Source: Octopus sinensis (taxonomy: Eukaryota). Taken from it: 64,000 nt of DNA. Both the position numbers and the translations under genes were made by a program. Within the stretch, counting starts at the first letter, position 1. The number at the start of each line of letters is the position of its first letter. The DNA lies in assembly GCF_006345805.1 (NCBI RefSeq), contig NC_043012.1, positions 52,762,001-52,826,000 on the forward strand, in the 5' to 3' direction. Positions 9,312 to 63,549 of this stretch are shown piece by piece. The notes beneath the pieces were generated by a model that did no database searches, had not been told where the DNA came from, and saw only the letters and a list, made by a program, of their open reading frames with translations.

Positions 9312-9384
<73 letters not shown>

Positions 9385-9386
<2 letters not shown>

Positions 9387-9548: not shown

Positions 9549-9587
<39 letters not shown>

Positions 9588-9939: not shown

Positions 9940-10222
9940 GACACTCCGAGGAGTGTTCCACTTGATCAGCTCAATGGAACAGCCTGCTCGAGAATTATCG
10001 CTCAAATAGCTAAACACTCCACAGAGATGCGTGCCCTTAACTTAGCCCTCAAGGAGATTCAGCGTGGCACAGAATATAAAGAAGCTTGTCCTTGGCAGTT
10101 GAGCGGATTGGAGCAACGTGAAATAAAATATCTTGTTGAAGGACACAACGCACCGACAGGGAATCGAACTCATGACTTTACGATCGTGAGTCGAATGCCC
10201 TAAACACTAAGCCACGCTCCTT
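9940..10222 (-). mobile_element. tRNA-derived SINE (duplicated at ~11805-12087)
   Basis: Minus-strand head GTGGCTTAGTGTTTAGGGCATTCGACTCACGATCG...GAGTTCGATTCC; body shared with SINE-D. Confidence 0.7.
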
Positions 10223-11175: not shown

Positions 11176-11249
<74 letters not shown>

Positions 11250-11250
11250 A

Positions 11251-11415
11251 AGGCGCAGGAGGGGCTGGGTGGTAAGTAGCTCGCTTACCAACCACATGGT
11301 TCTGGGTTCAATCCCACTGCGTGGCACCTTGAGCAAGTGTCTTCTGCTATAGCCTCGGGCCACCCAAAGCCTTGTGAGTGGATTTGGTAGACGAAAACTG
11401 AAGGAAGCCCGTCGT

Positions 11416-11452
<37 letters not shown>

Positions 11453-11645
11453 CTATATGTTTGTGTTTCTGACAACCGATGCTGGTGTGTTTACGCCCCC
11501 GTAACTTAGCGGTTCGGCAAAAGAGACCGATAGAATAAGTACAGGCTTACAAAAAATAAGTCCTGGGGTCGATTTGCTCGACTAAATATGGTGCTCCAGC
11601 ATGGTCGCAGTCAAATGACTGAAACAAATAAAAGAGAGTAAAAGA
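11251..11645 (+). mobile_element. SINE-A (duplicate copy)
   Basis: Near-identical to 9385-9781. Confidence 0.85.
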
Positions 11646-12639
11646 TGTATATAATAAATTTAGGCATTTCAAGTAAATAAATTTTGAAAAACCGATAGTT
11701 AAAAATATTTAGTTTAATAAACCTACAATGAAGTAGGGTCATATAAAAGCAGAAATATGCTTATAAACAACAAATATAGATTTTGTAAGAAGTACAAATA
11801 ACCGACACTCCGAGGAGTGTTCCACTTGATCAGCTCAATGGAACAGCCTGCTCGAGAAATTATCGCTCAAATAGCTAAACACTCCACAGAGATGCGTGCC
11901 CTTAACTTAGCCCTCAAGGAGATTCAGCGTGGCACAGAATATAAAGAAGCTTGTCCTTGGCAGTTGAGCGGATTGGAGCAACGTGAAATAAAATATCTTG
12001 TTGAAGGACACAACGCACCGACAGGGAATCGAACTCATGACTTTACGATCGTGAGTCGAATGCCCTAAACACTAAGCCACGCTCCTTCACAAAATTACAA
12101 GTACCGCTGGCATAGTATGCTTATCGCGAGCATCTTCTATGTCGCCACACAAACAGTGAAAATATTTGTTTGTTTTGTCAATACAAAAGGGAAACAAAAC
12201 TACTGATGTTATAACTTTGATGTCTTTCCCAAGGCAAAAGTGATGATAAATATATTTCGAATGCGATACGAAAACACATCGCAGATTCACTGGGAGATTA
12301 TGGTTTGCATTTCTGTGCTCAAAACAAAAAGTGGATATATTCTATTCCGTACGAGAAGCCCAAGGTCAATGTATTATTATTTAGTGCTGAGTTCCCCGAA
12401 TTAGTGATAAGTATGCCTCTGGCCAGCAGAGACTATGATACAATTTCATTTCCCAGTTTCAACTATTTCACTCCATATCTGGTGTGTCTGCTTCTTTCTT
12501 TTCTGATCCGAAGACTATATAATATTGTTAAATAGAAAGGGTATTTTTTAGCTTAAGTCGTAATTTTCAATTCTCACTTGAAGTAAACTTCACATACATA
12601 TCCTCACTGCCGCTTAAATATATAAGGTTTCCTGTGTCT

Positions 12640-12880
12640 ACTCTTTTACTCTTTTAGTTGTTTCAGTCATTTGACTGTGGCCACGCTGGAGCACCGCCTT
12701 TAGTCGATCAAATCGACCGCAGGACTTATTTTTTGTAAGCCTAGTACTTATTCTATCGGTCACTTTTGCCGAACCGCTAAGTTGCGGGGCCGGCCGTAAA
12801 CACACCAGCGATGTTGTGGGGACAAAGACAAACACATAAACACACACACACACACACACACGCACACACACACACACACA

Positions 12881-12940
<60 letters not shown>

Positions 12941-13111
12941 GTATGTACGACGGGCTTCTTTCAATTTCCGTCTACCAAATCCATTCACAAGGCTTTGGTT
13001 GGCCTGAGGCTATAGTAGAAGACACTTGCCTAATGTGCCACGCAGTGGGAATGAACTCGGAACCATATGGTTGGTAAGCAAGCTACTTACCACACAGCCA
13101 CTCCAGCGCCT
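12640..13111 (-). mobile_element. SINE-A, full length (its 3' half is duplicated at ~10775-11030)
   Basis: Reverse-complement match to the family. Confidence 0.85.
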
Positions 13112-15529
13112 AGATGACAAAAAAAAAGAAAAAGAAAACATATCTATATTGATATGATATAATTCCTTGTAATATATTGTGGCAAACGTAAATGAACTTG
13201 ATTGAACTTTGAAATACAGATACATATTGTCTGTGAGGAGAATTTTTTCCGGAGGCTCTTTCGCAGCGACAGGTCTTCCCGTGTCCAAGTGTACAATATG
13301 ATTACCCTCGAAGATTTGTGGGGTTTTTTTTTATCCTACAATATGAGGTACCATCGTGCTAATATTTTTCCAAGGTACTTAAATCTGATCTAGTTAACAA
13401 CGCACTTCTCAAAATTTGATTTTCTCTTTCTAGTACATAACACTCACTTGATTATTAACTTTGATTTTACGTATTTTAAGATAAATTACAAGTGAACGGT
13501 ACCAAATTTAATTTAAATTGTGAAATACGTAGACGTAACGATCACTCTGTCAGAGATTAAAAAAAAAGCAAACAAGAAAATAATATATATTTTCAATTCT
13601 AGAAGTAAATTTCACATACATAGCCTCACTACCGCTTAAATATATAAGGTTTCTGTATCTAGATGTATAAAAAAAAGAAAGAAAATATATCTATATTCAG
13701 CTATTAGGAGACATAGCTTCGTATATAATTCCTTGCCACCCAATTATCAATCGCAGAAATTCTTTAGAAACTTCTACTTCTTGGAGTCTAATTCCTTTTT
13801 GAAATGGAATATTTGCTCTTGTAATATATTGTGGCAAACGTAAATGAACTTGATTGAACTTTGATTAATAAATTCCAACATCCATTGCATTTCAGAATAA
13901 CAGAATTGAGAAAGCTTGTGTAACAAGTTGATATATGTAATTAAAGCTATCTCTAAGTGAAAGCCCTCGGGTATTATAGTTTGAAAGATTAAAAAGTAAA
14001 AGAGAAAGAAAGAAAAGGAAAGAAACAAATAGTTCATTGACAAATAATTCATTGTATTTACTTAGTGAAAGACAACTGGAAGTTTGTCTTTCGCTAGAAC
14101 AGTGACGACTCGAAATAACTTCATAACGATTGTGACATTCCAATCAGACATTTTACAAGAAAATCAGAACGAAGTGAAAAATCACGTGGGCGCTTTCGAA
14201 TTAGCTTCGTAAGAGAAACGATAATGGCTTTAAGCAAGACTCGAAAACGAGTCGTATCTTGACCTTCCAGAAATTTACCACTTTCTCTATCGATTATTGC
14301 ACTTTTTAAGTGTGTTCCATTAGCATTTAGTAATGAGTTCAAGTCTAACTACGGAATAGCTATCTTTTTTAATGTACTCTACATTAAATATGTTAAAGCT
14401 AACTTAACTCTTATTTTTAGCAATGGTGGTGTCCCTCACTTATTCTCTAAACAATTGTATTTGCCTACTCCAACCATTATATGTCATCATAAATTTATTT
14501 GCTTAATAAATCACTCAACACTATTCAATAACTACGGAAAGATTACATTTCACTGACGAAGTCATAATAATACCGAAATATTTGAGAAAGTTGCAGTCCA
14601 TATTTGTTGTGGTAATGAAGATGATGATGATAATGATAACGATAAAGTTGATGATGATGATGTTGACAATGATGATGGCGACGATGATAGTGATGGTGGT
14701 AGCTGCGGTCGGTGATGGGGGTAATGGTAAGCATAGTCTTAATAGTAAAAGTAATGGTAATGATGATGATGGTGGGAGGTGATGTAGGGGTCTTGGTAGC
14801 GTGACGACGACAATGACGACGGTCATCATCAACATCATCATCGTCATTATCGTCGTCGTCGTCATGATCATCATCATTATCCTCTTCACTACTATAAGTT
14901 AACATCTTAATAGTATGTTAGTTACAAAATTCTTTCTAGAATGAAAAACAAAAGAGTAAAAAAATAAAATAAAATACTGAAAAGAAAAAAAAATCAGATA
15001 TAAAACAAAAATGAAATAAAATAAAATCAAATCAAAACTCAGAAAGACTACTGTTTAACTGCTTAAAGAATTATTATTACCATCACTGGTTTGAATTTGG
15101 CATCAAATTGCAAATAAATAATATTTCTACGAGGAATGCTGGGTAAATTTCAAAGCTAGATTGCACTGAATGGACTCTCTTCTTTTGATGTTTTCAACGT
15201 TCCAATGGAGGCACCGTGTGAAGAAACGAGAAACAGTCACCAGTTTCGTTCGCTGCCTCGCTACTTTAAATAACTGTTTGAGGAACACATGTAGTGTCCC
15301 GCGTGCTTCCAAATGGCTACAAACGATATTGACGCTATCAACACGGCAAGCATTTAGATTGGAAGGTGCAACTGCACGCAGCGTTGAAATATTTTATCTA
15401 TTCCATACTTATATACCAACCCATCCAAACCTTGCCTTGTACTAACCTATCCTAACCCTGGTCGTATACACAAAACATACATGTGCACGCACGTACATAC
15501 ACAAACAGACAAACACAAACGCGTATGGA

Positions 15530-22774: not shown

Positions 22775-23535
22775 TTCTTTTCTACTCTAGGCACAGAGCC
22801 TGAAATTTTAAAGGGAGGGGGCCAGTCGATTACATCGACCCCCAGAACGCAACTGGTTCTTAATTTATCGACCCCGAAAGGATGAAAGGCAAAGTCGACC
22901 TCGGCGGAATTTGAACTCAGAACGTAAAGACAGACAAAATACCTATTTCTTTACTACCCACATGGGGCCAAACACAGAGAGGACAAACAAGGACAGACAT
23001 AGGTATTAAGTCGATTACATCGACCACAGTGCGTAACTGGTACTTAATTTATCGACCCCGAAAGGACGAAAGGCAAAGTTGACCTCGGCGGAATTTGAAC
23101 TCAGAACGTAACGGCAGACGAAATACCTATTTCTTTACTACCCACAAGGGGCTAAACACAGAGAGGACAAACAAGGACAGACAAAGGGATTAAGTTGATT
23201 ACATCGACCACAGTGCGTAACTGGTACTTATTTAATCGACCCTGAAAGGATGAAAGGCAAAGTCGACCTCGGCGGAATTTGAACTCGGAACGTAGCGGCA
23301 GATTAAATACCTATTTTTTTATCACCCACAAGGGGCTAAACACAGAGAAGACAAACAAGGACAGACAAAGGGATTAAGTCGATTATATCGACCCCAGTGC
23401 GTAACTGGTACTTAATTTATCGACCCCGAAATGATGAAAGGCAAAGTCGACCTCAGCTGAATTTGAACTCAGAACGCAGCGGCAGACGAAATACCGCTAA
23501 GCATTTTTCCCAGCTTGCTAATGTTTCTCTCAGCT
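22775..23535 (-). mobile_element. SINE-B with internal ~184-bp tandem array
   Basis: Tail junction ACCTAT at 22941, 23125 and 23309 (period 184). Confidence 0.85.
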
Positions 23536-23559
23536 CGCCGCCTTATATCAGATTTAATA

Positions 23560-24814: not shown

Positions 24815-25640
24815 CAGTAATATTGGTTTCAAATTTTGGTACAAGGCCTGAAAGACCGAGGTGGTGGTAAGTCAATTACATTGCCCCCAGTATTTGAATG
24901 ATACTTATTTTATCGACCCTAAAATGATGAAATCAAAGTCGATCTCGGCGGAATTTGAACTGAGAACATAAAAACGGACGAAATGCCGCTAAGCAATTTG
25001 TCCGGTTTGCTAACGATTCTTATTTCTTATTTCTTTATTGCCCACAAGGGGCTAAACATAGAGGGGACAAACAAGGACGGACAAAGGGATTAAGTCGATT
25101 ACATCGACCCCAGTGCGTAAGTGATACTTAATTTATCGACCCCGAAAGGATGAAAGGCAAAGTCGACCTCGGTGGAATTTGAACTCAGAATGTAACGGCA
25201 GAAGAAATACCTATTTATTTACTACCCACAAGGAGCTAAACACAGAGAGGACAAACAAGGACAGACAAACGGATTACGTCGATTGTATCGACCCCCAGTG
25301 CGTAACTGGTAATTATTTAATCGACCCTAAAAGGTCAACCTCGGCGGAATTTGAATTCAGAACGTAGCGGCAGACGAAATACCTATTTCTTTACTACCTA
25401 CAAGGGGCTAAATACTTTACTACCTACAAGGGGCTATATACAGAGAGGACAAACAAGGACAGACAAACGGATTAAGTCGATTGTATCGACCCCAGCGCGT
25501 AACTGGTAATTATTTAATCGACTCTAAAAGGATGAAATCAAAGTCGACCTCGGCGGAATTTGAACTCAGAACGTAGCGGCAGACGAAATACCGCTAAGCA
25601 TTTCGCCCGGTGTGCTAACGATTCTACCAGCTCACCGCCT
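24815..25640 (-). mobile_element. SINE-B array
   Basis: Three tails; one joins at AGAATCGTTAGC of a second SINE-B head (~25010-25020). Confidence 0.8.
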
Positions 25641-29764: not shown

Positions 29765-30345
29765 GGGGTGAACTGGCAGAAATTTTAGCACGCCGGACGA
29801 AATGCTTAGCAGTATTTCGTCTGCCGCTACGTTCTGAGTTCAAATTCCGCCGAGGTTGACTTTGTTTTTCATCCTTTCGGGGTCGATTAAATAAGTACCA
29901 GTTACGCACTGGGATCGATACAATCGATTTAATCCGTGTGTCTGTTCCTGTTTGTCCCTTCTGTGTTTAGCCCCTTGTGGGCAATAAAGAAATAGGTATT
30001 TCGTCTGTGTTTACGTTCTGAGTTCAAATTCCGCCGAAGTCAACTTTGCATTTCATCCTTTCGGGGTCGATTAAATAAGTATCAGTTACGCACTGTGGTC
30101 GATATAATCGACTTATTCCGTGTGTCTGTCATTGTTTGTCCTCTCTGCGTTTAGCCCCTTGTGGGTATTAAAGAAATAGGTTGGTATTTCGTCTGTCTTT
30201 ACGTTCTGAGTTCAAATTCCGCCGAGGTCGACTTTACCTTTCATCCTTTCAGAGTCGATAAATTAAGTACCAGTTGCATAATGTGGTCATTGTAATCGAC
30301 TGGTCCCCTCCCCAAACACTTCGTGCTTTGTGCCAAGAGTAGAAA
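29765..30345 (+). mobile_element. SINE-B array
   Basis: Head, two body-plus-tail units (…AAAGAAATA|GGTATTTCG), then the native SINE-B end. Confidence 0.85.
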
Positions 30346-42659: not shown

Positions 42660-43415
42660 TCTAATATTGGTTTCAAACTTTGACACAAGGACAGTAATTC
42701 TAGGAGAGGGGTGAGTTTATTACATTGAACCCAATACCCAAATGGTTGCTTATTTTATCGACACCCTAAAGGATGAAAGGCTAATTCAAACTCGGCGTGA
42801 AATGATCTCAGTACGAAAAGACAGAAGAAATACCTATTTCTTTACTACCCACAAGGGGCTAAACACAGAGAGGACAAACAAGGACAGACAAAGAGATTAA
42901 GTCGATTATATCGACCCCAGTGCCTAACTGGTACTTATTTAATAGAACCCGAAAGGATGAAAGCACAGTCGACATCGGCGGAATTTGATCTCAGAACGTA
43001 GCGACGGGCGAAAAGACAGAGGAAATACCTAATTTTTTACTACCCACAAGGGGCTAAACACAGAGAGGACAAACAAGGACAGACAAAGGGATTAAGTCGA
43101 TTATACCGACCTCAGTGCGTAACTGCTACTTAATTTATCGACCCCGAAAGGATGAAAGGCAAAGTCGACCTCGGCGGAATTTGATCTCAGAACGTAAAGA
43201 CGGACGAAATACCTATTTCTTTACTACCTGCAAGGGGCTAAACACAGAGAGAACAAACAAGGACAGACAAACGGATTAAGTCGATTATATCGACCTCAGT
43301 GCGTAACTGGTACTTAATTTATCGACCCCGAAAGGATGAAAGGCAAAGTCGACCTCGGCGGAATTTGAACTCAGTACGAAAAGACAGACGAAATGCCGCT
43401 AAGCATTTGCTCCGG
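42660..43415 (-). mobile_element. SINE-B array (3 tails)
   Basis: Tails near 42832, 43025 and 43210. Confidence 0.8.
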
Positions 43416-43679
43416 CGTTCTAACGATTCTGCCTATATTAATATTAATACCAACACCACCGCCAGCAAACTAACGACAGCAACGCCATTATCAATGCCTG
43501 TTAACTTCTATGAACTAAGCGTCACTGTTTTATCTGTGACTGTTACTGCTGTCTTTGTTGCTTCCGATGTTTTATTGTTGCTATTGTTGCTATTGTTGAT
43601 TTTGCTATTTTGTTGTTCTTTTTTTTTGTGTTCAAGCCCAATCTAGAAGAGAGGAGTCATAAAACGTATATGCAACTAC

Positions 43680-47574: not shown

Positions 47575-48645
47575 TCTATAAATATTGGTTTCAAATTTTG
47601 AGTACAAGACCAGCAATTTAGGGGGACGAGGTAAGTCGATTAGATTATACCCAATGCTCAGCTGAGACTTATTCTTCGATTCTAAAGGATGAAAGGGAAA
47701 GTCGACTTCGGCAGCATTTGAACTCACAACGTTAATTCAGAAGAAACGCAGCTAAGCATCTTTTTTGTGGGGCGCTAGCGATTCTGCCAGCTCACTTGCA
47801 ATCCCTAAAAATATTGGTTTCAAAATTTAGCACAATGCCAGCAATTGAGGGGGAGGGGTAAGTGAATTTCATTGACTCCAGTACTCAGCTGGTACATATT
47901 TTATCGACTCCAATAGAACGAGAGAGGAAAGTCAACCTCGGTGGAATTTGAAGTCAGAACTTAAAGACGGACGAAATACTGCCAAGTATTTTTCCGGCGT
48001 GTTAAAGTTTCTTATTTCTTTATTGCCCACAAGGGGCTAAACATAGAGGGGACAAACAAGGAGAGACAAACTGATTAAGTAGATTATATCGACCACAGTG
48101 CGTAACTGGTACTTATTTAATTGACCCCGAAAGGATGAAAAGCAAAGTCAACCTTGACGGAATTTGAACTCAGAACGTAGCGGCAGACAAAATACCGCTA
48201 AATATTTCGCCCGGCGTGCTACCGATTCTGCCAGCTCGCCAATATTTATTTCTTCATTGCCCACAGGGGGATAAACATAGAGGGGGAAAACAAAGGAATT
48301 AAGTCTATCACATCGATCCCAGTGCGTAACTGGTATTTATTTAATCGACCCCGAAAGGATGAAAAGCAAAGTCGATCGCGGTGGAATTTGAACTTAGAAC
48401 GTAACGAAATACCTATTTCTTTACTACCCACAAGGGGCTACACACAGAGGGGACAAACAAGGACAGACAAACGGATTAAATCGATTATATCGACCCCAGT
48501 GCGTAACTGGTACTTAATTTATCGACCCCGAAAGGATAAAAGGCAAAGTGGACCTCGGCGGAATTTGAACTCAGAACATAATGGCAGACGAAATACCGCT
48601 AAGCAATTCGCTCGGCGTGCTAACGATTATGCCAGCTCACCGTTT
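47575..48645 (-). mobile_element. Cluster of SINE-B copies and composite units
   Basis: Several heads, bodies and tails; one tail joins at AGAAACTTTAAC of a head (~48005-48015). Confidence 0.75.
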
Positions 48646-49724: not shown

Positions 49725-50070
49725 ATGAGGATATGTGGTAAGAAGCTTGCTTCTCAACCACATGGCTCCGAGTTCAATCCCACCGCATGGCATCTTAGGC
49801 AAGTGTCTTCTTCTATAGCCTCGGGCCGACCAAAGTCTTGTGAGTGAACTTAGTAACTGAAATTAGAAACTGAAAGAAAATGTGTTGGTGTGTTTATGTC
49901 CTCGTTATCTAGCGCTTCGACAAAATTGTCCGATAAAATAAGTACCAGGTTTTAACGAAAATAAGTACTGGGATAGATATTCTCTCGACTAAAGTTCCTC
50001 AAGGAGGTACTCTAGCATGGCCGCAGTCCAATGACTGAAATAAGTAAAAGATAAAGGATAAAGGATGCTT
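49725..50070 (+). mobile_element. SINE-A, degenerate, with an empty target site
   Basis: GTGGTAAGAAGCTTGCTTCTCAACCACATGG is uninterrupted at ~49735-49765. Confidence 0.75.
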
Positions 50071-52580: not shown

Positions 52581-52982
52581 CAATAGCTCCGATAGTGCGG
52601 GCGCAAATTGCCTCTGGAGGTACACATGCAGACAGATCCTGCCAGTGGTGGTGTTCAGCCAGCGCTGCTCTGAAGTGGCGCCAAAAAGAGAGATATTTCT
52701 TTATTTACCTATAAAAAGGCCTACATAGAGGGGACATTACAAGGACAGACAAGGGACATTTAGGGTACAAACACGCTTCTTATATACACTATGAAAAAAC
52801 GGATGGATTTATATATATTTTGCGGATGGGAGTTAAAAATATGAATGATGGTTGGATGAAATTTGGGCCCGGGTTAGTGAATTAACCCGCCGGTTCGTTA
52901 TCCCTTTTGGTAATCTTTTTTCCTTCTTTTATGCTCCGACCGACCGTGCAAGCACAGCCTCATGCATTTTCATCTTTCTTAC

Positions 52983-53220
52983 CACTCGCCAAAAAGAGAG
53001 AGAGAGAGAGATCCGAACAGGGTTTTCCCTTTATATAGTTTTCCATCGCGAGCCTCGTTGTGATCTCGCGCATGGCAAATGGATGCAGGTGAGGTCTCGC
53101 TCCAGTCTCGGAGATGGCAATGGCAGCCGCGAGATCTCATCCAATATGGCGCTGACTGCTTGTGCCGCTACAACGGCATCTGTGATGCCTTATTTCTTCG
53201 AAGTCTCCGACACCGGTGAG
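52983..53220. promoter_or_regulatory. Candidate CpG-rich promoter / first-exon region
   Basis: Local CpG enrichment, TCTCGCG and CGCGAGA motifs, CCAATATGGCG (YY1-like); plus-strand ATG 53146 to donor CCG|GTGAGA at 53216; minus-strand TATATAAAG (53029-53037) and donor GTG|GTAAGA at 52982. Confidence 0.35.
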
Positions 53221-54841
53221 AGATAGTGAAGCTTGATAGGAAGAGAAAAGAAAATTATCGTCAAACCGTAGTTCTGGCCTGAATGCCTTGTACCAGAGTG
53301 GTGACTGTTAAAAGTACCAAAAAATCAGATGATAGTACTAAACCAAGTGATGGATAGTGTCGACCACTCAAGAACTCAGAATGCAAAGAAATCTTTTACA
53401 ATGCTCTGGCAATTCCACCACTCACGACTGCGACTTTATTTTATGGATTTCGAAGAATCGAAAGGAAAAGTTGGCTTCTGTAGAATTTGAACTCAGAATA
53501 CAGAGAACAGTAAACAAATACCACGAGGTACTTTTGTCTTACACTCTAACGACTGCCAATTCTCCGCCTTGATAATTTTCATAAAAATTGCTTCATTATG
53601 GAGACGACTTCAATTATGACTTACATATAGTTTCATTGTTAAGGTTTTTTAAGGTAGAACGCTGGAACTTGTTTCGTTGTGTTAAAAATAGCGAAGGCAG
53701 CGAGTTGGCAACATTGTTAGCGTGTCAGAAAAATACTTAGCCGCTTGCTTTTCTTCCAGCTTTTTACGTTCTGAGTTCAAATTCCACCGAGGTCGACTTT
53801 ACCCTTAATTTTTTCAGCATCGATAAAATAAGTACCAGTGATAGTACTGGAGTCGATGTAATCGAGTTACCTCCTTCTCCAAAAATTGCTGGCATTGTGC
53901 AACATATTTGAAACAACTATGTTTAAAATATCGATTATGTCTTCGATTTCATTCTATCACAAATTACATTCTATGATCTTCAATCAAGAAGGTTACACTG
54001 GACAATGTGATTCCCGTTACAAAAAAAAAAAAAAAGAAAGAAAGAAAGACAGGACGGTCACGAGTGGACTGCTTTTGATCGTAGGTCTGCTCGATCAAAG
54101 AGATGGCAGAGAGTAAGACAACAACAATTACATAACATCTTCGATAACAGGCTTCTTACGTTTTCCGAAAAACGTCTATCACAGATAGTGATTGTGATTA
54201 TAATATTCTAACTCTTGTGATGTCAGACAATTTTCAAAACTAAAAAAAAAATTGTCCAAAACCAGCCAAAAGCTGCCATTAGAAGTAAGTGACCAGAAAT
54301 CTGTAAACAAGACTCCAATTACATCGTTACATTCAACAGCACAAACACCAATGCCACCGCCGCCGCCATTACTGCCGCCGCTCATCACTTGTATACGTCT
54401 ATATAAAACCAATTCGACAGAGATGGCTGTATAGAATATAAACAGTTTAAAAGTAGTTTAAACCGGCAGTTTGAGGAGAATGATTTAAAATTCTCTAAAC
54501 AGACCATTTCCAAGGAAAATAAAGGGAGAGAAAATAACAATATATCTCTTGTTAAAAGTTGTTGACGCTATCGCTGGAGACTTCCTGGAAATATGTTGGT
54601 AAACAGCTGCTACCATTCCGAAATAGAGATACACTGAGGAGATACCTGGAAAGATTTTAACCAATGCAAGACACCCAGGTGGATAACAAAGCTGAAGAAA
54701 AATTTCTACAACCTACTCGCAGAATCGGATCTCTAGATATCATTAAACGATACATAGTAAAGAATAAGTTCAATGTACACAAACTAGGCTTTTAAAATAG
54801 AAATGTTTAGGCGCAGGCGTGGCTGTGTGGTAAGAAAATTG

Positions 54842-55263
54842 GGATCTGTTCGGTTTGAACGGCAGTTTTTAACATAATTTCTAGGTAACTAAAAAATTTT
54901 AAACTTCGTATACTGGTTGAATGTGTTTATAAAACATCTTTTTCTCTTGGCTTTATTGAAAAAAATTCTATAGTTTGTAAGATATTTGTTGGGTTTTGTT
55001 TTTCTTCAATTTCTGCAATTTCAACGAATCAATGACTGTCTATTGAGGTGAAAATATTCTGTGCCGTATGAATATGTCCCTCGTTTAAGAAACAGATTGG
55101 GTTTATTTACATTTGTGAAGAAAAAAAGATACCCTTCCCCCACCCCTAACCCTAACCCTAAAACAGATTGAAATGCAATAGATCGATACTAGGGTCATAA
55201 TTATGGGTGACAATTTCATATGACACCGCTAGAAAAAAACTGCCGTTCAAACCGAAAAGATTC
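54842..55263. mobile_element. MITE with ~29-bp TIRs and 8-bp TSD
   Basis: TIRs GGATCTGTTCGGTTTGAACGGCAGTTTTT and AAAAACTGCCGTTCAAACCGAAAAGATTC; TSD GAAAATTG at 54834-54841 and 55264-55271. Confidence 0.9.
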
Positions 55264-55271
55264 GAAAATTG

Positions 55272-55559
55272 TATTTTTGATACCTAAATGGAATTGAGTA
55301 AGAGGTTCATTGCCTCAAAGCGGCTTCATATGTTATCAATGTAAGAGGTCTATTGCCTCCTTAATGTTTTTGTAAGAGGTTTATTGCCTCAAAATGTTTT
55401 ATAAAAGAACAATGTGATCGGGTATAGAGCAATCAGTGGGCGTTACTGCTGCCCTCATTTTTCACCATTTCATTTGTCATTCATATCATTATGTGTGTGT
55501 GTGTCCAGCCCGCAGCTTCCTTTCTGTGTAAGGCCAATGTGGCCAATTAAATGAAATAA
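55272..55559 (+). mobile_element. 5'-truncated relative of the Gag-only element (3' UTR only) inside a SINE-A head
   Basis: Ends TCTGTGTAAGGCCAATGTGGCCAATTAAATGAAATAA|AGAAGATTG, compared with copy 2 TCTGTGTAAAGCCTTTATGGCAATTGAAAAGAAATAA|AGAAGCTTG. Shares a TTTTCAT(T/G)TGTCATTCATA motif with copy 2. Confidence 0.65.
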
Positions 55560-56476
55560 AGAAGATTGTTTCCCGACCACATAGTTCTGGGTTCAGTTCC
55601 ACTATGTGTTAACCCCTTGGGCAAGTGTCTTCTACTATAGCCCCAAACCAACCAAAACCTTGTGATAGACAGAAACTAAAAGAAGCCCGTCGTATTGTGT
55701 GCGTGTCTTTGTGTCTGTGTTTGTTCACCCACTATCACCACCGCTTGACAACTGGTGTTGGCGTGTTTACGCCCCCCCCCCGTAACCTAGCGGTTCGGTG
55801 AAACAGAGCGATAGAATAAATACTAAGCTTTAAAACATAAGTCCTGAGGTAATTTTTTCGATTAGAACCTTACAGGCTGTACCCCAGCATGGCTGCAGTT
55901 AAATGACTGAAATAAGTACAAGATTAAGGTTCAAAGAATACTTTAGAATACTTAGATTCTGCACTCCAGATGTGGAACACGAAGCTCTGAGTTCGATTAT
56001 AGCATGGGGAATAGTGAGTAAGTACTTTCTTTTACCAAAACTTCGGATTGATTCAATTCTTATGAGTGAAAAAAATGGGTGAACAGAAACTGCGGAATCT
56101 TGTCAGATAGATTGATTCTGCAATTCAAAGGCCCATGTTACAGACTACGTCATGGAGGTGTTACTTTAGGATTATATTAAGGTACACATGCGTGCGGAAT
56201 ACTCATCCACGTGTATCTCAGTTGCTTAGATAAGTGAATATTCGTTGTCGAAACCGATAGAGATCCAATTATCCAACATCAGTTTCCTCTTATTACTATG
56301 GCCGGGCTCCAGCCTGGGGCCGCAGCAACAAAGTCCAGCCGTCACGCTTTTCGGTCCATCATCACTGCCCCGAGGCCCTGGATAAATTCCAGGCCAGTAT
56401 CTGCAATCAAGTTGTAAGTGTGACGACGTTTTCCTCTTCTTATATCACCATGAAGTGGGTTCCACAAGGCTAATTA

Positions 56477-58164: not shown

Positions 58165-58366
58165 GAATAAGAGAAAATAAACAGAGAGAGAATAAAAAAT
58201 AAACTTGTAGATTTAGCGGGCAAGCATGGCGGGCTTTTTTCAGCTTCCATCTACCAAATCCATTCACAAGGCTTTGGCCAGCCCGAGGTTATAGTAGAAG
58301 TCACTTGCCCAAGGTACTACGCTATGGGGCTGAACTGGGGACCACATGGCTGGGAAGCAAGCTTCT

Positions 58367-58780
58367 TATTTCATTACTACCCACAAGGGGCAAAACATAG
58401 AGGGGACAAACAAGGACAGACAAAGAGTTAAGTCGATTAGATCGAACCCAGTGCGAAACTTGTACTTAATTTATCGACCCCGAAAGGATGAAAGGCAAAG
58501 TGGACCCCGGCGGAATTTGAACTCAGAACGTAACGGCAGACAAAATACCTATTTCTTTATTACCCACAAGGGGCTAAACATAGAGAGGACAATCAAGGAC
58601 AGGCATAGGTATTAAGTCGATTACATCGACCCCAGTGCGTAACTGGTACTTAATTTATCGACCCCGAAAGGATGAAAGGCAAAGTCGACGTCGGTGGAAT
58701 TTCAGCTCAGAACGTAACGGCAGACGAAATACGGCTACGCATTTCGCCCGGCGTGCTAACGTTTCTGCCAGCTCGGCGCC
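58367..58780 (-). mobile_element. Composite SINE-B dimer inserted into the SINE-A target site
   Basis: Tail ...GTAATGAAATA joins AGAAGCTTGCTTCC; the head abuts the SINE-A head remnant. Confidence 0.8.
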
Positions 58781-60011
58781 CTTACAACACTGCTACGCCT
58801 ATATATATATTTTTTTTTTATGTCCTTCAGTCGGGAGAGAATGGCGATACCCATGAATACATGGTCTCTGAAACTGAAGCGAAAGAAGAAGGGAAGTTAC
58901 TTTCAAACAGAAAACCGGATATAATAGATTCTACATAGCCGCAAATTTCCTGGCACTGTGACTAGGTTAGAGATCAGTTTTACGATGTTCCTACTACAGC
59001 TGCTTAGTAAACTGATCGCCCCCATTCTGCGGTACTTAATTTCAGCTAGGGAGCCTGGCGCATTTATGAGTTAAATAATCTAGCTCCGGATAACTAGATA
59101 TAAACTATAAACAATATGGGTGTCCGTCACACTTTCTCCTTGGCCTATCTATCATTGATTTCAAATTTTGGCACCAGGCCTGCATGTTCGTGAGTGGTGG
59201 GTAATCGATTATTCCAACCCCATTACTCAACTGGTCCATATTTTATCGACTCTAAAAGAACGAAAGGCAAAGTCGACCTTGGTGGAATTTGAACTCAGAA
59301 CGTAAAGACGGACGAAATGCCATTTAGTATTTCGCCCGTCGCGGTAACGATTTTACCTGCTCGCCATCTTCTGCTATCGATCATTGAATGTACGAGTGTA
59401 TTGGTCAAATAAAATTGAAAACGTTTCTTTCTTTTCTTTCTCCAAAATCTTTTTGTCGCAGACACTTTTGAATAAAACTGTTAAGATCCTGGTAAGTCCA
59501 GACTCGTAATTCAATTTTAATGATTCTAATGATCATCTTAATTTCTTTTATTTCACTAATTATCTTGGAAACCAAATGATGGTCATAATATTTCACTTCA
59601 TATTTCCGGCAAGACATAGAGCTCTTACAGGCGGCGGCGATTTGGCAGAGCCGTTAGAGCCAGATGTCAACTTTGCCTTCCATCTTTTCAGATAAAAACG
59701 AAGCACTTAGGCAGAAGATTGGTAGAATTGGTAGAATTGTAAGAACTAAAAAACCGGATACTTCGCAGTATTTCAGATTTTTGCGTTCTGAGTTCATATC
59801 TTGTCGCAACCTACTTGACTAAAGCGCTTAATCCTTAGTTGCATTTCAGAGAGTCCTCCCTGTTGCAACTATTCGGATCAGGCTTCTGCAGTGAGGAACG
59901 CTTCATCTCTCTCACAAGTCTCAGAAGCTCCGTGAAGTGTCATGGATACTGCCTCTGAATGAAAGATTTTCATAAGCGCAGGCGTGGCTGTGTGGTAAGA
60001 AACTTGCTTCC

Positions 60012-61463
60012 GTGCTGTGTTATTTGCTGTGTTGATTTTTGACGAGACGGACGGAATTTTTTGAGCTGCTTGCCAGCGGTTTGTTGGTGAGTGTTGTACT
60101 AGTGGAAAAGAGTGTATTCGGACCTTAGCGAGTATGAACTATCCTCAGCAGAGGAGGAGCTCTTTAAGGCGGTAAACAGAATGGACGAGCATTTGGAAAG
60201 ACTAAAGAGTTTTGCTGAGGAGGCAGAGGTAAAGGAAAAGGAAGTACACCTAACCGGACTGAAGGAGCCGAGTAAGATGACACAGAAGGTGGGAAGTAAT
60301 GTAAAGTTATTACTCCCGAAAAGGGTTATGGTAAATATGGAAAAGAAGACTATTACCTACAAGGTACACTCAGTGGAGAGTAGAAGGTGGAGCGGATGGA
60401 GATGGAAAAAATTGAAAAAGCTCTGAAGGGGCTTTCGAAGGAAGTAAGGTAAATAGGAAGAGGACATGGGACGGTGGTTGTCCAGTTTAGGACAGAAGAA
60501 GAGGCAAAGAGGCTGGCGAGTACGACTGTAAAAATTGAGAAACTAGTACTTCTACCCACCTGCCTTGGAAGAAAGACTTCTAAGGTGAGGGTAGAAGGAA
60601 TTCCACCTGACACAGAAGTGGCTTGGGTTGCGGCAGTCGTCTTTGTTGGAAGTGAGGAGGAGGTGGCTGTCCTTCAAGCCACAGAGAAGAAGGAAGCTAT
60701 AAAGGAAAAATACTGGAAATGATCATACAAGCGGAGGCGAAGGAGCTGGAAAATTTGGCGGAAACGGTGACGATGGGAGAAATAGTATTGAGAGTATGGG
60801 TAGAGGGCAGAATTCCGCGATGCTTTAAATGTGGCCAAAAAGGCCACATTAGAGCACACTGCCCTCTACAGAAGAAAACAATAGAGGAAACAACAGATGA
60901 ACCAGTTGTGGAGACGGAAGAGAAAAAAAAAGGAAGAAAAGAAAGACGGACGAAAGGAGGAAGAATGGATAGTAACAGAGAGTAGAAGGAAGAAGAGGAA
61001 GAAAAGAAAGAACACTGAGTGTGATGTGGTACCCCAGTCCAACTCCATCCCACCCAAGACCACTCGGACCCACCCACTCCCTTTCCCCACAAGAAAAGGA
61101 AAAAAGTGCAGACACCACAGAATTTAGAAGACCCCTCCCCCGGTGAAAAAGGTTACGGAAGAATGTTGTCTTTGAGCGATAGCGAAAGTGAAAATAGAAC
61201 AACTAGGCCAAAGACTAAAGACGAATTGGGACTCAGAGGTAGCGAGTGGTGTTACTCAGTGTGGGGTGAGTAGCACACTCTTCATATTTTCATTTTCAGA
61301 TATCATTCATGTTATCATAACCTTAATATATTTTCTCATGTTCATTTTCATGTCACTCACGGTATCATATTTTTTTTTTACATATTTTTAATTGTTATAT
61401 GTCCCCACATGTTTTGTAGTGTCCCCTCTATGTTATGCCTTTATGGCAATTTGAAAGAAATAT
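60012..61463 (+). mobile_element. Gag/ORF1-only (HAL1-like) non-LTR retroelement of L1/Tx1 type, copy 1
   Basis: Bounded by AAGAAACTTGCTTCC (59997-60011) and AGAAGCTTGCTTCC (61464-61477). Frameshifted ORF pieces at 60112-60426, 60474-60722 and 60719-60985 include the zinc knuckle CFKCGQKGHIRAHC. No APE or RT motifs seen. AT-rich 3' UTR ends ...GGCAATTTGAAAGAAATAT. Confidence 0.8.
60112..61127 (+). pseudogene. Frameshifted Gag/ORF1-like protein with CCHC zinc knuckle (copy 1)
   Basis: YSDLSEYELSSAEEELF...; MVVQFRTEEEAKRL...LGRKTSKVRVEGIP...; IPRCFKCGQKGHIRAHC. The start ATG is lost by a 1-nt deletion relative to copy 2, and there are several frameshifts. Confidence 0.7.
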
Positions 61464-61477
61464 AGAAGCTTGCTTCC

Positions 61478-62927
61478 GGTTACCCAGAGTGCATTTGGTT
61501 TGTTGTTTGTGTGCGAGTCGGAAGTTTTTTTTTTGTTTTGCTCTTTGAGGTTAGAGATGTACTCAGACCTTAGCGGGTCTGAGCTGTCTTCTTCAGAGGA
61601 GGAGCTGCTGAGAGTAGTAGAAGGTATGGACGAATATTTGAAGAAAATGAAGAATTTTGCGGAGGCTGTGGAAGTGAAGAGAAAAGAGGTGGATCTATCA
61701 AGAATGAAGGAGCATGGAAAAATGGTGCAGAAAGTGGGCGGCAACGTGACGTTGTCATCCCAACAAAGAATAATGGATGGCATAAAAAGAAGAACAGTCA
61801 TATACAAAGTTTACTCGATAAAGAGTAAGAAAGTCGACCAAATAGAAATAGAGAAAATAGAAAAGGCAGTAAAGGAGGAATCCAACGGAGTAATATACAT
61901 GACAAGAGAATGCCAATATGGGACAATGGTAGTGCAGTTTAGAACAGAGGAGGAGGCAAGGAGGCTGGCGGGTAAAAATGTAAAAACGGAGGAAATGGTC
62001 CTTCTACTCACGTATCTTGGAAGAAGGAATTCCAAGATAAGGGTAGAAGGAATCCCGCTTGGGTTGCGACAGCCGTCCTCATTGGAAGAGAAGAGGAAGT
62101 GACTGTCCTCCAGGCCACGGAAACGGAAGAAGGAAGATTTAAAGGGAAGTCGCTTGAACTTATCATTCAGACCGTGGAAAAACAACTGGAAAATTTGGCA
62201 GACAGTATCATTGGGAGAGATAGTTCTAAGAACGTGGGTGGAGAACAGAATTCCACGCTGCTTTAAATGTGGCCAAAAGGACCACATTAGAGCGCACTGC
62301 CCTCTTCAGAGGAAAATGACAGAAGAAGCGGCGGTGGAGACGGAGGAGGAGGAAAAGGAAGAATTACAGATAGATGGAAGGAACAAGGAGGATGAATGGA
62401 CAGTGACCGAGAACAAAAGGAAAAAGAGAAAGAAGAGGAAGAACAGTCAGTGTGATGTGGGACCCCAGACCAACTCCATCCCACCCAAGACCACTCAGAC
62501 CCACGCTCCCCATATGATACCAAACCTACCCACCTCCCTCTCCTCACAGGAAAAAAAAGAAGAAAGAACAGACACCACAAAATTTAAAAGACCCCTCCCC
62601 CGGTGAAAAAGGTTACGTGTACATGGAGGAGAGAGTGTTGTCACTCAGCGATGGGGGAAAAGGAAAGACTAGATTAAAGACTAAAGAGGATTTAGGACTC
62701 AGAGGTGGCAATTGGTGTTACTCAGTGTGGGGTGAGTAACACACTTTTCATATTCTCATTTCTCAAGTTATCATTCATGTATCATTATTTTAATATTTTG
62801 ATTTTAATGTTTTTCATGTTCATTTTCATGTGTCATTCATAGCCTCATATTTTTATTGTTATATGTCCCCACATGTGTTGTAGTGTCCCCTCTGTGTAAA
62901 GCCTTTATGGCAATTGAAAAGAAATAA
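61478..62927 (+). mobile_element. Gag/ORF1-only (HAL1-like) non-LTR retroelement of L1/Tx1 type, copy 2
   Basis: Diverged paralogue of copy 1, bounded by AGAAGCTTGCTTCC (61464-61477) and AGAAGCTTGCTTC (62928-62940). Contains CFKCGQKDHIRAHC; 3' end is ...GGCAATTGAAAAGAAATAA. Confidence 0.8.
61557..62606 (+). pseudogene. Frameshifted Gag/ORF1-like protein with CCHC zinc knuckle (copy 2)
   Basis: ATG at 61557 (MYSDLSGSELSSSEEELL...), an RRM-like segment (MVVQFRTEEEA, YLGRRNSKIRVEGIP), frameshifts, then IPRCFKCGQKDHIRAHC and the basic EWTVTENKRKKRKKRK. This layout matches L1/Tx1-clade ORF1 proteins. Confidence 0.75.
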
Positions 62928-63549
62928 AGAAGCTTGCTTCTCAATTACATGGTTCCGGGTTCAAGCCCATTGCGTGGCACCTTGGGCAAGTGTCTTTTAC
63001 TATAGCCTCAGAACGACCAAAGGATGAAAGAGAAAGTCGACCTCGACGGAATTTGAACTCAGAACGTAACGGCAGACGAAATATGGCTATGCATTTCGCC
63101 CAGCGTGCTAACGATTCTGCCAGCTCGCCGCCTTGCTCACACAATATATATGTACGTACACACAATATGTATGTGAGTGGATTTGGTAGACGGAAACTGA
63201 AAAGAAGCCCGTCGAATATATATGCTTATATGTGTGCCTTTCTGTCTGTGTTTGTCTCACCCCCACGCCACCATCGCTTGACAACCGATGTTGGCGTGTT
63301 TACCACCCCCGTAACTTAGCGGGTCGGCCAAAGAGACCCATAGAACAAGTACCAGGCTTACAAAGAATAAGTCCTGGGATCGATTTCTTCGATTAAAAGG
63401 CAGTACTCTAGCATGCCCGCAGTCAAATGATTGAAACAAGTAAAAGAATAAAAGAATAAAATAAATAGGATATCCAGCTTTTTGAAAATCCATTTGCAAT
63501 TGTTTGTGAGACAAATCAGAGAAGGCGAAGAAGTGGAAGTGTCCTAAAT

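What the first reader, a model, noticed from the sequence alone, without database searches (positions are those of the whole stretch)
59974..62990. Tandem Gag-only (half-L1-like) retroelements inserted at one 14-bp site in a SINE tRNA head
Seen: two ~1.45-kb elements (60012-61463, 61478-62927) are separated and flanked by three copies of AGAA(G/A)CTTGCTTC(C) (59998, 61464, 62928). This is the SINE-A sequence just after the A-box; an empty site is visible at ~49740 (GTGGTAAGAAGCTTGCTTCTCAACCAC). Each element carries only an ORF1-like frame with a CCHC knuckle plus a 3' UTR ending GAAATA(A/T), with no endonuclease or RT motifs. The copies are clearly diverged (MYSDLSEYELSSAEEELFKAV vs MYSDLSGSELSSSEEELLRVV), so this is not a recent tandem duplication. 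Known: Tx1-group L1-clade elements are often sequence-specific and regenerate their target as a TSD; HAL1 elements encode only ORF1 and are mobilised in trans. Inference: a non-autonomous, target-specific half-Tx1 family that uses a high-copy SINE head as its landing site and builds tandem arrays by repeated insertion.
Basis: partly seen in the sequence, partly recalled or inferred. Interest (0 to 1): 0.88.

Follow-up and report, generated by a model that had tools for sequence, protein, structure and literature searches.

The report
Gag-only retroelements targeting a SINE head
Two decayed copies of a small octopus jumping gene, which keeps only the RNA-binding first gene of its parent LINE, sit head-to-tail at the same nucleotide inside another repeat; this combines two known behaviours (site-specific LINE relatives and half-LINEs) and is not a new kind of element.

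Summary
Elements A (60011-61463) and B (61477-62927) are flanked and separated by AGAA(A/G)CTTGCTTC at 59998, 61464 and 62928. Joining the outer flanks rebuilds an intact copy of an abundant octopus SINE.

- **Independent insertions.** A and B are not a local duplication. Identity rises from about 46% in the 5'UTR to 91% in the 3' tail, and dN/dS is 0.21 over 326 codons (1.07 and 1.09 in the wrong frames).
- **What the ORF is.** It is a LINE ORF1 homologue, 35% identical (E=6e-42) to the ORF1 upstream of an APE+RT ORF2 in an O. vulgaris LINE. The model shows a helix, two RRM-like domains and a CCHC knuckle.
- **Architecture elsewhere.** An intact 384-aa ORF1-only relative sits in O. sinensis, inserted in a second SINE at the equivalent head position.
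- **Shared tail.** The last ~45 nt occur in full-length LINEs and two SINE families.
- **Same SINE position.** It is used by a short relative (55559), a SINE-B (58366) and an element in another sample (5' junction only).
- **Relatives.** Other lineages use other targets and also form tandems around a TSD.

Tx1-clade membership and a tRNA origin of the SINE head were not demonstrated. Verdict: new variant of known kinds (target-specific Tx1-type elements plus HAL1-like half-LINEs), moderate interest.

The parts
59976..59997 (+). Left part of the host SINE-A copy: its head, including the A-box-like TGGCTGTGTGG, up to the insertion point GGTA|
   Evidence: Matches the heads of at least 15 other SINE-A copies in the window.
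59998..60010 (+). Target-site duplication copy 1, AGAAACTTGCTTC (plus C at 60011)
   Evidence: (family D20).
60011..61463 (+). Element A, an ORF1-only non-LTR retroelement, decayed. 5'UTR 60011-60111. ORF remnant 60112-61146 with GTG in place of ATG, an in-frame TAA at 60450 and at least 3 frame changes. CCHC knuckle 60821-60862. 3'UTR 61147-61463. Conserved tail 61416-61463 ending GAAATAT.
61464..61476 (+). Target-site duplication copy 2, AGAAGCTTGCTTC (plus C at 61477), sandwiched between A and B
61477..62927 (+). Element B, the same family but a diverged lineage, decayed. 5'UTR 61477-61556. ORF 61557-62606 in three frame pieces (a 16-bp deletion near 62052 and a frame change near 62204). 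CCHC knuckle 62259-62300. Basic KRKKRKKRK stretch 62415-62432. TGA at 62604. 3'UTR 62607-62927. Conserved tail 62880-62927 ending GAAATAA.
62928..62940 (+). Target-site duplication copy 3, AGAAGCTTGCTTC, continuous with the rest of the SINE
62941..63480 (+). Right part of the host SINE-A copy. It contains a nested reverse-oriented SINE-B head fragment at 63019-63134 and a short TG/TA-rich tract.
   Evidence: joined flanks match other SINE-A copies at 75-86% identity; family D1.
49727..50062 (+). Example of an unoccupied SINE-A copy. The empty target AGAAGCTTGCTTC is at 49741-49753.
55277..55559 (+). Element C, a short element with a related 3' end (...GGCCAATGTGGCCAATTAAATGAAATAA) inserted at the same SINE-A position. 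Right TSD AGAAGATTGTTTC at 55560-55572. Degenerate left TSD AGAAAATTGTATTT at 54833-54841 plus 55272-55276, interrupted by a MITE. The 5' extent of C is uncertain.
58354..58830 (-). A full SINE-B plus one partial SINE-B unit. Its tail (...GGGTAGTAATGAAATA) abuts AGAAGCTTGCTTC (58366-58354) of a SINE-A copy whose head is missing.

Best explanation
**What it is.** A and B are two independently inserted, now dead, copies of a roughly 1.45-kb non-autonomous non-LTR retrotransposon of octopods.

**What it keeps and what it lost.** The element keeps a ~100-nt 5'UTR, an ORF1-type RNA-binding/chaperone gene and the LINE 3' end. The ORF1 protein has an N-terminal helix, two RRM-like domains, one CCHC knuckle and a basic stretch. 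The 3' end is a ~45-nt conserved tail with a small hairpin, ending GAAATA. The element has lost the ORF1 C-terminal domain and all of ORF2 (endonuclease and reverse transcriptase).

**How it moves (inferred).** Its own protein coats its RNA. The APE-RT protein of a related autonomous L1-superfamily LINE, probably Tx1 clade, recognises the shared tail and copies the RNA into the genome by target-primed reverse transcription.

**Where it lands.** Insertion is aimed at one position in the head of an abundant SINE. The bottom strand is nicked at GGTA|AGAAGC and the top strand 13-14 bp downstream, after CTTGCTTC(C). The target is therefore duplicated on both sides.

**Why a tandem.** Each insertion regenerates the target, so a second element from a diverged lineage landed in one of the two copies. 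That gives TSD-A-TSD-B-TSD.

**Shown versus inferred.** Shown: the anatomy, ORF1 homology, tail sharing, purifying selection, repeated use of the site and independence of A and B. Inferred: trans-mobilisation, which enzyme does it, and that the endonuclease sets the specificity.
For: - **Anatomy.** Three TSD copies and an intact SINE after joining the flanks. No LTRs or TIRs.
- **ORF identity.** Pfam zf-CCHC. A profile of the ORF finds 403 relatives at E<=0.001. All 13 whose source organism was looked up are from octopods: O. bimaculoides, O. vulgaris, O. sinensis and Argonauta hians.
- **ORF1 homology.** 35% identity over 224 aa, E=6e-42, to the ORF1 that precedes a 1132-aa ORF2 in O. vulgaris locus L002. 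That ORF2 has Exo_endo_phos + RVT_1 + zf-RVT. Its best solved relative is human LINE-1 ORF2p, E=2e-71 across EN+RT, against 1e-24 for R2.
- **Fold.** The AlphaFold model has pLDDT 85.7. Its best PDB matches are tandem-RRM proteins.
- **Selection.** dN/dS = 0.21 over 326 codons (z=10), against 1.07 and 1.09 in the two wrong frames.
- **Divergence gradient.** Identity is 46% in the 5'UTR, 75% in the ORF, 87% in the 3'UTR and 91% in the last 70 nt.
- **Architecture elsewhere.** An intact 384-aa ORF1-only element of 1.58 kb lies in O. sinensis (L001 5479-7057) with a 19-bp TSD in a SINE-B head. A shorter derivative lies in O. bimaculoides (L005).
- **Tail sharing.** The tail is shared with LINEs of L002 and L003, with SINE-B and with SINE-C. 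It forms a 4-bp hairpin with compensatory changes.
- **Site reuse.** A, B, C and one SINE-B lie at the same SINE-A nucleotide. L008 has the same 5' junction. One ORF1-only element and two SINE-B copies lie at the equivalent SINE-B head position.
- **TSD length is normal for this machinery.** TSDs are 14-15 bp at unrelated sites.
- **Related LINEs behave the same way.** They form tandems sandwiching TSD-like spacers or target a microsatellite.
- **Published precedent.** Sequential tandem insertion around a TSD by Tx1-type elements and their SINEs is described in PMC4494074.
Against: - No autonomous LINE with this exact 3'UTR and this SINE target was found. The LINEs recovered share only the terminal ~45-60 nt and sit at other targets.
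- The insertion sample is small: about 8 junctions in roughly 140 kb of octopod DNA.
- Other carriers of the tail (SINE-C and some SINE-B copies) sit at unrelated sites, so the machinery is not uniformly site-specific.
- The SINE-B at 58366 lacks the upstream half of the SINE-A, so that case is not a clean TSD-flanked insertion.
- Tx1 membership rests on indirect evidence.
- Both window copies are dead, so they say nothing about present activity.
Confidence: 0.8

Rival explanations
1. The element and its history are the same, but the site choice is made by RNA-DNA homology and not by endonuclease specificity. Source copies sit inside SINEs and give read-through transcripts ending in SINE sequence. 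That sequence anneals to a nicked SINE copy, so the product looks like a precise insertion at the same position.
For: Carriers of the same tail insert at unrelated sites with ordinary 14-15-bp TSDs, so the enzyme can cut elsewhere. SINE-B arrays always have the form [full copy][unit from one fixed point]n, which suits homology-assisted resolution. Annealing of read-through 3' ends is established for R1/R2-type elements (own knowledge).
Against: The 5' junction is identical in A, B and L008 (after CTTGCTTCC). This fixes the second-strand break too, which homology alone does not predict. A SINE-B, whose sources are mostly not inside SINE-A, used the same site. Different LINE lineages of the group each have their own target, as expected if specificity is encoded in each endonuclease. 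Tx1L endonuclease has been shown to be target-specific (cited in PMC4494074).
Confidence: 0.2
2. One insertion was followed by local tandem duplication (unequal crossing-over or replication slippage) of element plus TSD. A and B then diverged in place.
For: This would also give TSD-element-TSD-element-TSD. The host SINE is itself old, at about 75-86% identity to other copies.
Against: In-place decay is neutral and uniform, but identity runs from 46% in the 5'UTR to 91% in the tail. dN/dS is 0.21 in frame against about 1.08 out of frame. The three TSD copies differ by 0-1 of 13 bases, while the ORFs differ by 25%. The 5'UTRs are unalignable and differ in length.
Confidence: 0.03
3. The junctions are RNA-level chimeras. 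The reverse transcriptase copying a SINE-A RNA switches template, at a fixed stop or processed 5' end (AGAAGC...), to the 3' end of another tail-bearing RNA, so no site-specific integration occurs.
For: The 58366 case has the SINE-A starting exactly at AGAAGC with no upstream head. Template-switch chimeras such as U6-L1 are known for L1 (own knowledge).
Against: In A/B, C and L001 the upstream SINE head plus a duplicated target is present on the 5' side. A chimeric cDNA does not produce that. The copy of the target between A and B is also unexplained by template switching.
Confidence: 0.04
4. The ORF is a host (domesticated) zinc-knuckle gene or an LTR-retrotransposon Gag, and the copies are processed pseudogenes or solo fragments.
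For: Two O. bimaculoides gene models contain this sequence (P0002, P0003).
Against: P0002 is a chimera with a C2H2 zinc-finger part, and P0003's C-terminal half does not resemble the ORF. There are no LTRs. There is no poly(A); the 3' end is instead the LINE/SINE-type conserved tail. The closest full-length relatives are ORF1s immediately upstream of APE-RT ORF2s. Multiple diverged lineages share the same discrete TSD-flanked unit.
Confidence: 0.02

Closest known systems
Tx1-clade target-specific LINEs and their dependants: Tx1L in Tx1D (Xenopus); Tx1-Mar with SINEU-3 in Mariner-N4_AMi (crocodilians); Keno, Kibi, Koshi
   Same: An APE-type LINE group in which each lineage has its own target, and the targets include other transposons and microsatellites. 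TSDs are about 13-19 bp. Non-autonomous partners use the same target. Tandem copies sandwiching a TSD are explained by sequential insertion (PMC4494074). All of these behaviours are seen here.
   Different: The target here is the head of a SINE, at equivalent positions in two SINE families. The dependant is a protein-coding ORF1-only element and not a SINE. A conserved 3' tail is shared by the LINEs, the ORF1-only elements and the SINEs. The host is a cephalopod. Clade membership by RT phylogeny was not tested.
HAL1 (half-L1) of mammals
   Same: A non-autonomous LINE derivative that encodes only ORF1p and arose repeatedly (PMC5753468). Here the ORF1-only architecture is under purifying selection, and at least two or three deletion derivatives of different extent exist.
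   Different: HAL1 derives from mammalian L1, whose ORF1p has a coiled coil, RRM and CTD (Transposase_22). It ends in poly(A) and inserts without sequence specificity. Here ORF1 has two RRM-like domains plus a CCHC knuckle, with no Transposase_22 hit. The 3' end is a specific tail and insertion is site-directed.
Stringent LINE/SINE pairs with a common 3' tail, such as eel UnaL2/UnaSINE1 and a stringent L1 lineage of monocots (PMC3472496)
   Same: A short conserved 3' stem-loop plus terminal motif is shared between the autonomous LINE and its dependants. This is the presumed recognition signal for the reverse transcriptase.
   Different: In those systems the dependants are SINEs and insertion is not site-specific. 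The hairpin here is only 4 bp and its role is untested.

Membership tests
Non-LTR (LINE-type, TPRT) retroelement | Discrete unit flanked by target-site duplications, with no LTRs or TIRs | tested here: met
   13-14-bp TSD in three copies around A and B. 19-bp TSD around the O. sinensis relative. No long terminal direct or inverted repeats.
Non-LTR (LINE-type, TPRT) retroelement | 3' end shared with an autonomous element that encodes EN and RT | tested here: met
   The ~45-nt tail aligns with the 3' ends of the L002 and L003 LINEs, whose ORF2 has APE + RVT_1 + zf-RVT. Only the terminal part of the 3'UTR is shared.
Half-LINE (HAL1-like, ORF1-only non-autonomous LINE) | Encodes an ORF1 homologue and no endonuclease or reverse transcriptase | tested here: met
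   ORF1 homology at E=6e-42 and profile E=1.5e-49 to P0004. No EN or RT in 1.45 kb. An intact example is in L001.
Half-LINE (HAL1-like, ORF1-only non-autonomous LINE) | ORF1 kept functional while the family spreads | tested here: met
   dN/dS = 0.21 between A and B, with wrong-frame controls at 1.07 and 1.09.
HAL1 proper (mammalian L1 derivative) | ORF1p of the L1 type (Transposase_22: coiled coil, RRM, CTD) and a poly(A) 3' end | tested here: not met
   No Transposase_22 hit. The model shows two RRM-like domains plus a CCHC knuckle. The 3' end is GAAATA with no poly(A).
Half-LINE (HAL1-like) | Mobilised in trans by the ORF2 protein of an autonomous relative | not testable with these tools
   Inferred from the shared tail only.
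Tx1 clade of LINEs (for the partner and parent LINE) | RT groups with Tx1 references in a phylogeny or in RTclass1 | not testable with these tools
   No labelled Tx1 references were available. The ORF2 belongs to the L1 superfamily. In O. vulgaris, L1-Tx1 is the only L1-like class listed among recently active LINEs (PMC13282606).
Tx1 clade of LINEs | ORF1 with RRM-type domain(s) and a CCHC knuckle; ORF2 with APE, RT and a C-terminal zinc-binding motif | tested here: met
   This feature is also found in plant L1s, so it is not exclusive to Tx1.
Tx1 clade of LINEs | Sequence-specific insertion, with tandem copies sandwiching the TSD | tested here: met
   The SINE-A site is used 5 times and the SINE-B head site 3 times. 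Other targets are (ATT)n in L003 and TSD-sandwich tandems in L002, L005 and L006. The sample is small.
tRNA-derived SINE (SINE2) as the target | Head recognisably tRNA-like | tested here: inconclusive
   ARAGORN found no tRNA in the window. Rfam found none at gathering score, nor at E<=10 on the two heads tested. A-box-like TGGCTGTGTGG and B-box-like GGTTCAGTCCC are visible. Octopus SINEs are reported as tRNA-derived (Ohshima & Okada 1994, cited in PMC4824008).
LTR retrotransposon Gag | Flanking LTRs, with PBS/PPT | tested here: not met
   No LTR-like direct repeats apart from the A-B homology itself.

The most novel reading that the evidence does not exclude
One octopod L1/Tx1-like LINE group, marked by the conserved ...TGTCCCCTCTnTGT..GCCCYTTRTGGGC..AAAGAAATA tail, could be the engine behind a large part of the octopus repeat landscape. 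It would mobilise a very abundant SINE (SINE-B), further SINEs, and a selected lineage of ORF1-only 'parasites of the parasite' that use SINE heads as safe harbours. Its site-directed nicking inside SINE-B, with the 5' end resolved by homology, would also be the mechanism that builds the many ~184-bp SINE-derived tandem arrays.
Probability: 0.3. Interest if true: 0.6.

Novelty: new variant of a known kind. Interest (0 to 1): 0.45.

Why it matters
- **A natural experiment on ORF1.** The element shows ORF1 kept under purifying selection in an element that has no ORF2. This bears on how far ORF1 proteins act in cis while ORF2 proteins can be borrowed.
- **A new target class.** The head of a high-copy SINE joins the list of landing sites used by site-specific LINE relatives.
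- **A candidate LINE partner for octopus SINEs.** Octopus SINEs make up about 8-12% of these genomes. The shared tail links them to a concrete LINE group, which is a step toward explaining octopus repeat expansions and SINE-derived tandem arrays.
- **Annotation.** Such elements produce chimeric gene models (for example A0A0L8GU38) and nested SINE fragments that repeat annotators may misread.

Tried and rejected
- Exact-sequence look-ups of P0001, P0002 and the window ORF found no contigs.
- ARAGORN and Rfam (gathering score, and E<=10 on two SINE heads) gave no tRNA match, so the tRNA origin of the heads stays unverified.
- A second word-indexed homology search with an 8-sequence profile returned only O. 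bimaculoides UniRef and MetaClust entries without contigs.
- A PDB sequence search with the ORF profile gave only knuckle-level hits at E>0.05.
- ZCCHC3 papers were checked for a stated Tx1 origin, because fish relatives carry Pfam RBD_ZCCHC3 domains. Nothing usable was found.
- I first read the ORF through to ...WCYSVWGE (61271 / 62737) and thought this resembled the start of the LINE ORF1 C-terminal domain. I dropped this. A, B and P0001 share the upstream TGA, the 39 downstream codons are not significantly constrained (dN/dS 0.58, z=1.0), and BLASTP shows no such match.
- Priming by microhomology between the tail (AGAAATA) and the target (AGAAGC) was considered and rejected. Insertions at unrelated sites show that the element ends at GAAATA, and the full tail is present at the SINE junctions.

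Full report
**Observation**

AGAAACTTGCTTC lies at 59998-60010, and AGAAGCTTGCTTC at 61464-61476 and 62928-62940. These three copies bracket two co-linear elements, A (60011-61463) and B (61477-62927).

The motif with up to one mismatch occurs 7 times in the window against 0.14 expected. The other occurrences lie in copies of the same SINE, here called SINE-A. Joining 59960-60010 to 62941-63480 gives a continuous SINE-A that matches at least 15 other copies in the window. An unoccupied site is at 49741-49753.

There are no LTRs or terminal inverted repeats, and no other full copy of the element in the window. The window contains no ORF with RT or endonuclease character. It is a repeat-dense stretch of an Octopus genome, and the closest database proteins are from O. 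bimaculoides.

**A and B are independent insertions**

- Identity between A and B is far from uniform. It is about 46% in the first ~100 nt (effectively unalignable, and of different lengths), 75% over the ORF, 87% in the 3'UTR and 91% in the last 70 nt. The TSD copies differ by 0-1 of 13 bases.
- In the conserved reading frame dN/dS is 0.21 over 326 codons (pS 0.55, pN 0.18, z=10). The same columns read in the two wrong frames give 1.07 and 1.09 (first pass).
- Most of the divergence therefore accumulated while the protein was under purifying selection, in two separate active lineages. It did not accumulate after a local duplication.
- Both copies are now dead. A has GTG for ATG, a TAA at 60450 and several frame changes. 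B has a 16-bp deletion near 62052 and a further frame change.

**What the ORF is**

- Pfam finds only a CCHC knuckle.
- A profile search of 1.84 billion representative proteins gave 403 relatives at E<=0.001. All 13 whose source organism was looked up are octopod: O. bimaculoides, O. vulgaris, O. sinensis and Argonauta hians.
- Fetching their loci was decisive. In O. vulgaris (L002) the homologous ORF lies directly upstream of a 1132-aa ORF2 with Exo_endo_phos, RVT_1 and zf-RVT domains. It is 35% identical over 224 aa, E=6e-42.
- That ORF2's best solved relative is human LINE-1 ORF2p, E=2e-71 across endonuclease and RT. R2 proteins reach only 1e-24.
- Similar full-length LINEs occur in O. sinensis (L003) and O. 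bimaculoides (L006).
- The ORF of A and B is therefore a LINE ORF1 homologue.
- An AlphaFold model (pLDDT 85.7) shows an N-terminal helix, two RRM-like domains and the knuckle. Its best PDB matches are tandem-RRM proteins.
- Compared with the LINE ORF1s, the element lacks the C-terminal domain (the '...F.DVG...' region seen in P0006, P0009, P0032 and L002) and all of ORF2.
- The ORF most likely stops at a TGA shared by A (61144) and B (62604), which is also where P0001 ends. That leaves a 3'UTR of about 320 nt.

**The ORF1-only architecture is a propagating form**

- O. sinensis locus L001 carries an intact 384-aa ORF1-only element of 1.58 kb (5479-7057). It has a 5'UTR, an ORF, a ~330-nt 3'UTR and the same kind of tail.
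- O. bimaculoides L005 carries a still shorter derivative.
- A and B share their ORF-to-3'UTR layout despite their deep divergence.
- This parallels mammalian HAL1, the ORF1-only L1 derivative that arose several times (PMC5753468).

**Shared 3' tail**

The last ~45 nt of A and B (TGTCCCCTCT[A/G]TGT..GCCTTTATGGCAAT..AAAGAAATA) align with several other 3' ends:

- the full-length LINEs of L002 and L003;
- the O. sinensis ORF1-only element;
- an abundant second SINE, SINE-B, with about 22 tails in the window;
- a ~310-bp SINE-C.

RNAalifold finds one small hairpin, a 4-bp stem with a YTTRT loop. Three of its four pairs show compensatory changes. This is suggestive only.

It is the classical signature of dependants that borrow a LINE's reverse transcriptase through a common tail. 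I found no LINE sharing more than this terminal segment with A and B, so the exact partner is still missing.

**Target choice**

In about 112 kb of octopod DNA, a tail model found 31 tails.

- *ORF1-only type.* All four tails of this type abut a SINE head. Three are at GGTA|AGAAGCTTGCTTC of SINE-A: A, B, and the short element C ending at 55559, whose left TSD is degenerate and split by a MITE. One is at GG|CAGAAACGTTAGC of SINE-B (L001, 19-bp TSD).
- *Relation of the two sites.* They align as equivalent positions just after the A-box-like motif of the two SINE heads.
- *SINE-B copies at these sites.* One SINE-B abuts the same SINE-A nucleotide (58366). Two abut the SINE-B head site.
- *Another sample.* A Logan contig (L008) shows a further ORF1-bearing element whose 5' junction is ...CTTGCTTCC|GG, identical to those of A and B.
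- *Chance.* There are about 17 SINE-A heads in 128,000 strand-positions, so a random hit on that nucleotide has probability of about 1e-4.
- *Subfamily bias.* Only the AGAAGC-type SINE-A subfamily is occupied (3 of 7), against 0 of about 10 AGTAGC-type heads (Fisher p about 0.05).
- *Unrelated sites.* Tail carriers there have ordinary 14-15-bp TSDs, so the 13-14-bp duplication here is the normal product of this machinery.

**Behaviour of the wider group**

- The L002 LINEs form a tandem array of at least 3 copies, 98.6-99.6% identical, separated by ~11-bp spacers that resemble the left flank.
- L006 and L005 each show two different elements sandwiching a duplicated target, TTTTTCAAACAGCTGGTCG and ACACAAC[A/C]CAGTT.
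- The L003 LINE is flanked on both sides by (ATT)n.
- Lineage-specific targets, transposons and microsatellites as targets, and tandems around a TSD are the published hallmarks of Tx1-clade LINEs and their SINEs. One example is Tx1-Mar and SINEU-3 in a Mariner element with a 16-bp TSD, where the tandems are explained by sequential insertion (PMC4494074).
- RepeatMasker-based studies list L1-Tx1 among cephalopod LINEs. In O. vulgaris it is the only L1-like class among recently active families (PMC13282606; PMC8967140).
- I could not run an RT phylogeny with labelled references, so 'Tx1' remains probable rather than shown.

**Mechanism**

Shown: the anatomy, ORF1 homology, selection, tail sharing, repeated use of one site and the independence of A and B.

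Inferred:
- The element's RNA, bound by its own ORF1 protein, is reverse-transcribed at the target by the APE-RT protein of a related LINE that recognises the tail.
- The bottom strand is nicked left of AGAAGC and the top strand 13-14 bp downstream.
- The regenerated target then received a second element.

Whether specificity lies in the endonuclease (my preference) or in annealing of read-through RNA is open. I prefer the endonuclease because the 5' junction is also fixed and because different lineages have different targets.

The rivals of local duplication, template-switch chimeras and a host or LTR Gag are contradicted by the selection and gradient data, by the upstream SINE head plus TSD, and by the ORF1-ORF2 context of the relatives.

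**Novelty and verdict**

Site-specific Tx1-type elements, tandem TSD sandwiches and half-LINEs are all known. I found no description of any of the following in the searchable literature, and Repbase and Dfam could not be checked:
- the combination in one family;
- a SINE head as the target;
- a cephalopod LINE-SINE tail partnership.

I rate this a new variant of known kinds, of moderate interest (0.45).

Noticed in passing
window 22790-23544(-), 24920-25640(-), 29767-30250(+), 42838-43433(-), 48250-48640(-), 58370-58830(-): SINE-B forms short tandem arrays with a period of about 184 bp. Each array is one full-length SINE-B followed by units that all start at GGTATTTCG and end at AAAGAAATA. This fits repeated target-primed insertion at one nick site inside SINE-B, with the 5' end resolved by homology to the target copy.
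   Followed up: partly
window 52693-53005 (-): A ~310-bp SINE-like element (SINE-C) carries the same 3' tail. It is inserted at a non-SINE site with a clean 15-bp TSD, TCTCTCTTTTTGGCG.
   Followed up: partly
window 54842-55263: A MITE with ~29-bp terminal inverted repeats (GGATCTGTTCGGTTTGAACGGCAGTTTTT) and an 8-bp TSD, GAAAATTG (54834-54841 and 55264-55271), which is hAT-like. It sits inside the left TSD of element C.
   Followed up: no
L002 (O. vulgaris OX597840.1) 441-13026: A tandem array of at least three full-length LINEs with a period of about 5.28 kb, 98.6-99.6% identical. Copy 1 has intact ORF1 and ORF2. The ~11-bp spacers differ at 2-3 positions (CACTGATAAGG, CACCCGATAGG), which is more variable than the copies themselves and is unexplained.
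   Followed up: partly
L003 (O. sinensis CM016872.1) ~7790-13347; L006 and L005 (O. bimaculoides CM046605.1): Related LINEs and derivatives use other targets. The L003 LINE is flanked by (ATT)n on both sides. In L006 a LINE is followed by a second element across a 19-bp TSD, TTTTTCAAACAGCTGGTCG. In L005 a ~0.9-kb truncated-ORF1 derivative is followed by another element across ACACAAC[A/C]CAGTT.
   Followed up: partly
window, SINE-A heads listed: SINE-A has two head subfamilies, GGTAAGAAGCTTGCTTC and GGTAAGTAGCTTGCTTAC. All occupied sites belong to the first (3 of 7 against 0 of about 10).
   Followed up: partly
window 63019-63134: The host SINE-A carries a reverse-oriented SINE-B head fragment that lacks its 3' tail, followed by a TG/TA-rich tract. 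This is an odd, 3'-truncated nested piece.
   Followed up: no
proteins P0002 (A0A0L8GU38) and P0003, O. bimaculoides: Two gene models begin with the N-terminal ~150-215 residues of this ORF1-only family. P0002 continues into C2H2 zinc fingers and P0003 into unrelated sequence. They are either annotation chimeras or exonised copies.
   Followed up: no
protein P0014 (1135 aa, source not looked up): A Helitron-like protein (Helitron_like_N plus PIF1 helicase) contains an internal segment, residues 476-640, homologous to the ORF1. This may be gene capture by a Helitron.
   Followed up: no
L008 (Logan SRR11869390) 1056-2305: An ORF1-bearing element whose 5' junction with a SINE-A head (GGTAAAAAAAACTTGCTTCC|GGTATAGCG) is at the same nucleotide as in A and B. 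The contig ends before the 3' junction.
   Followed up: partly
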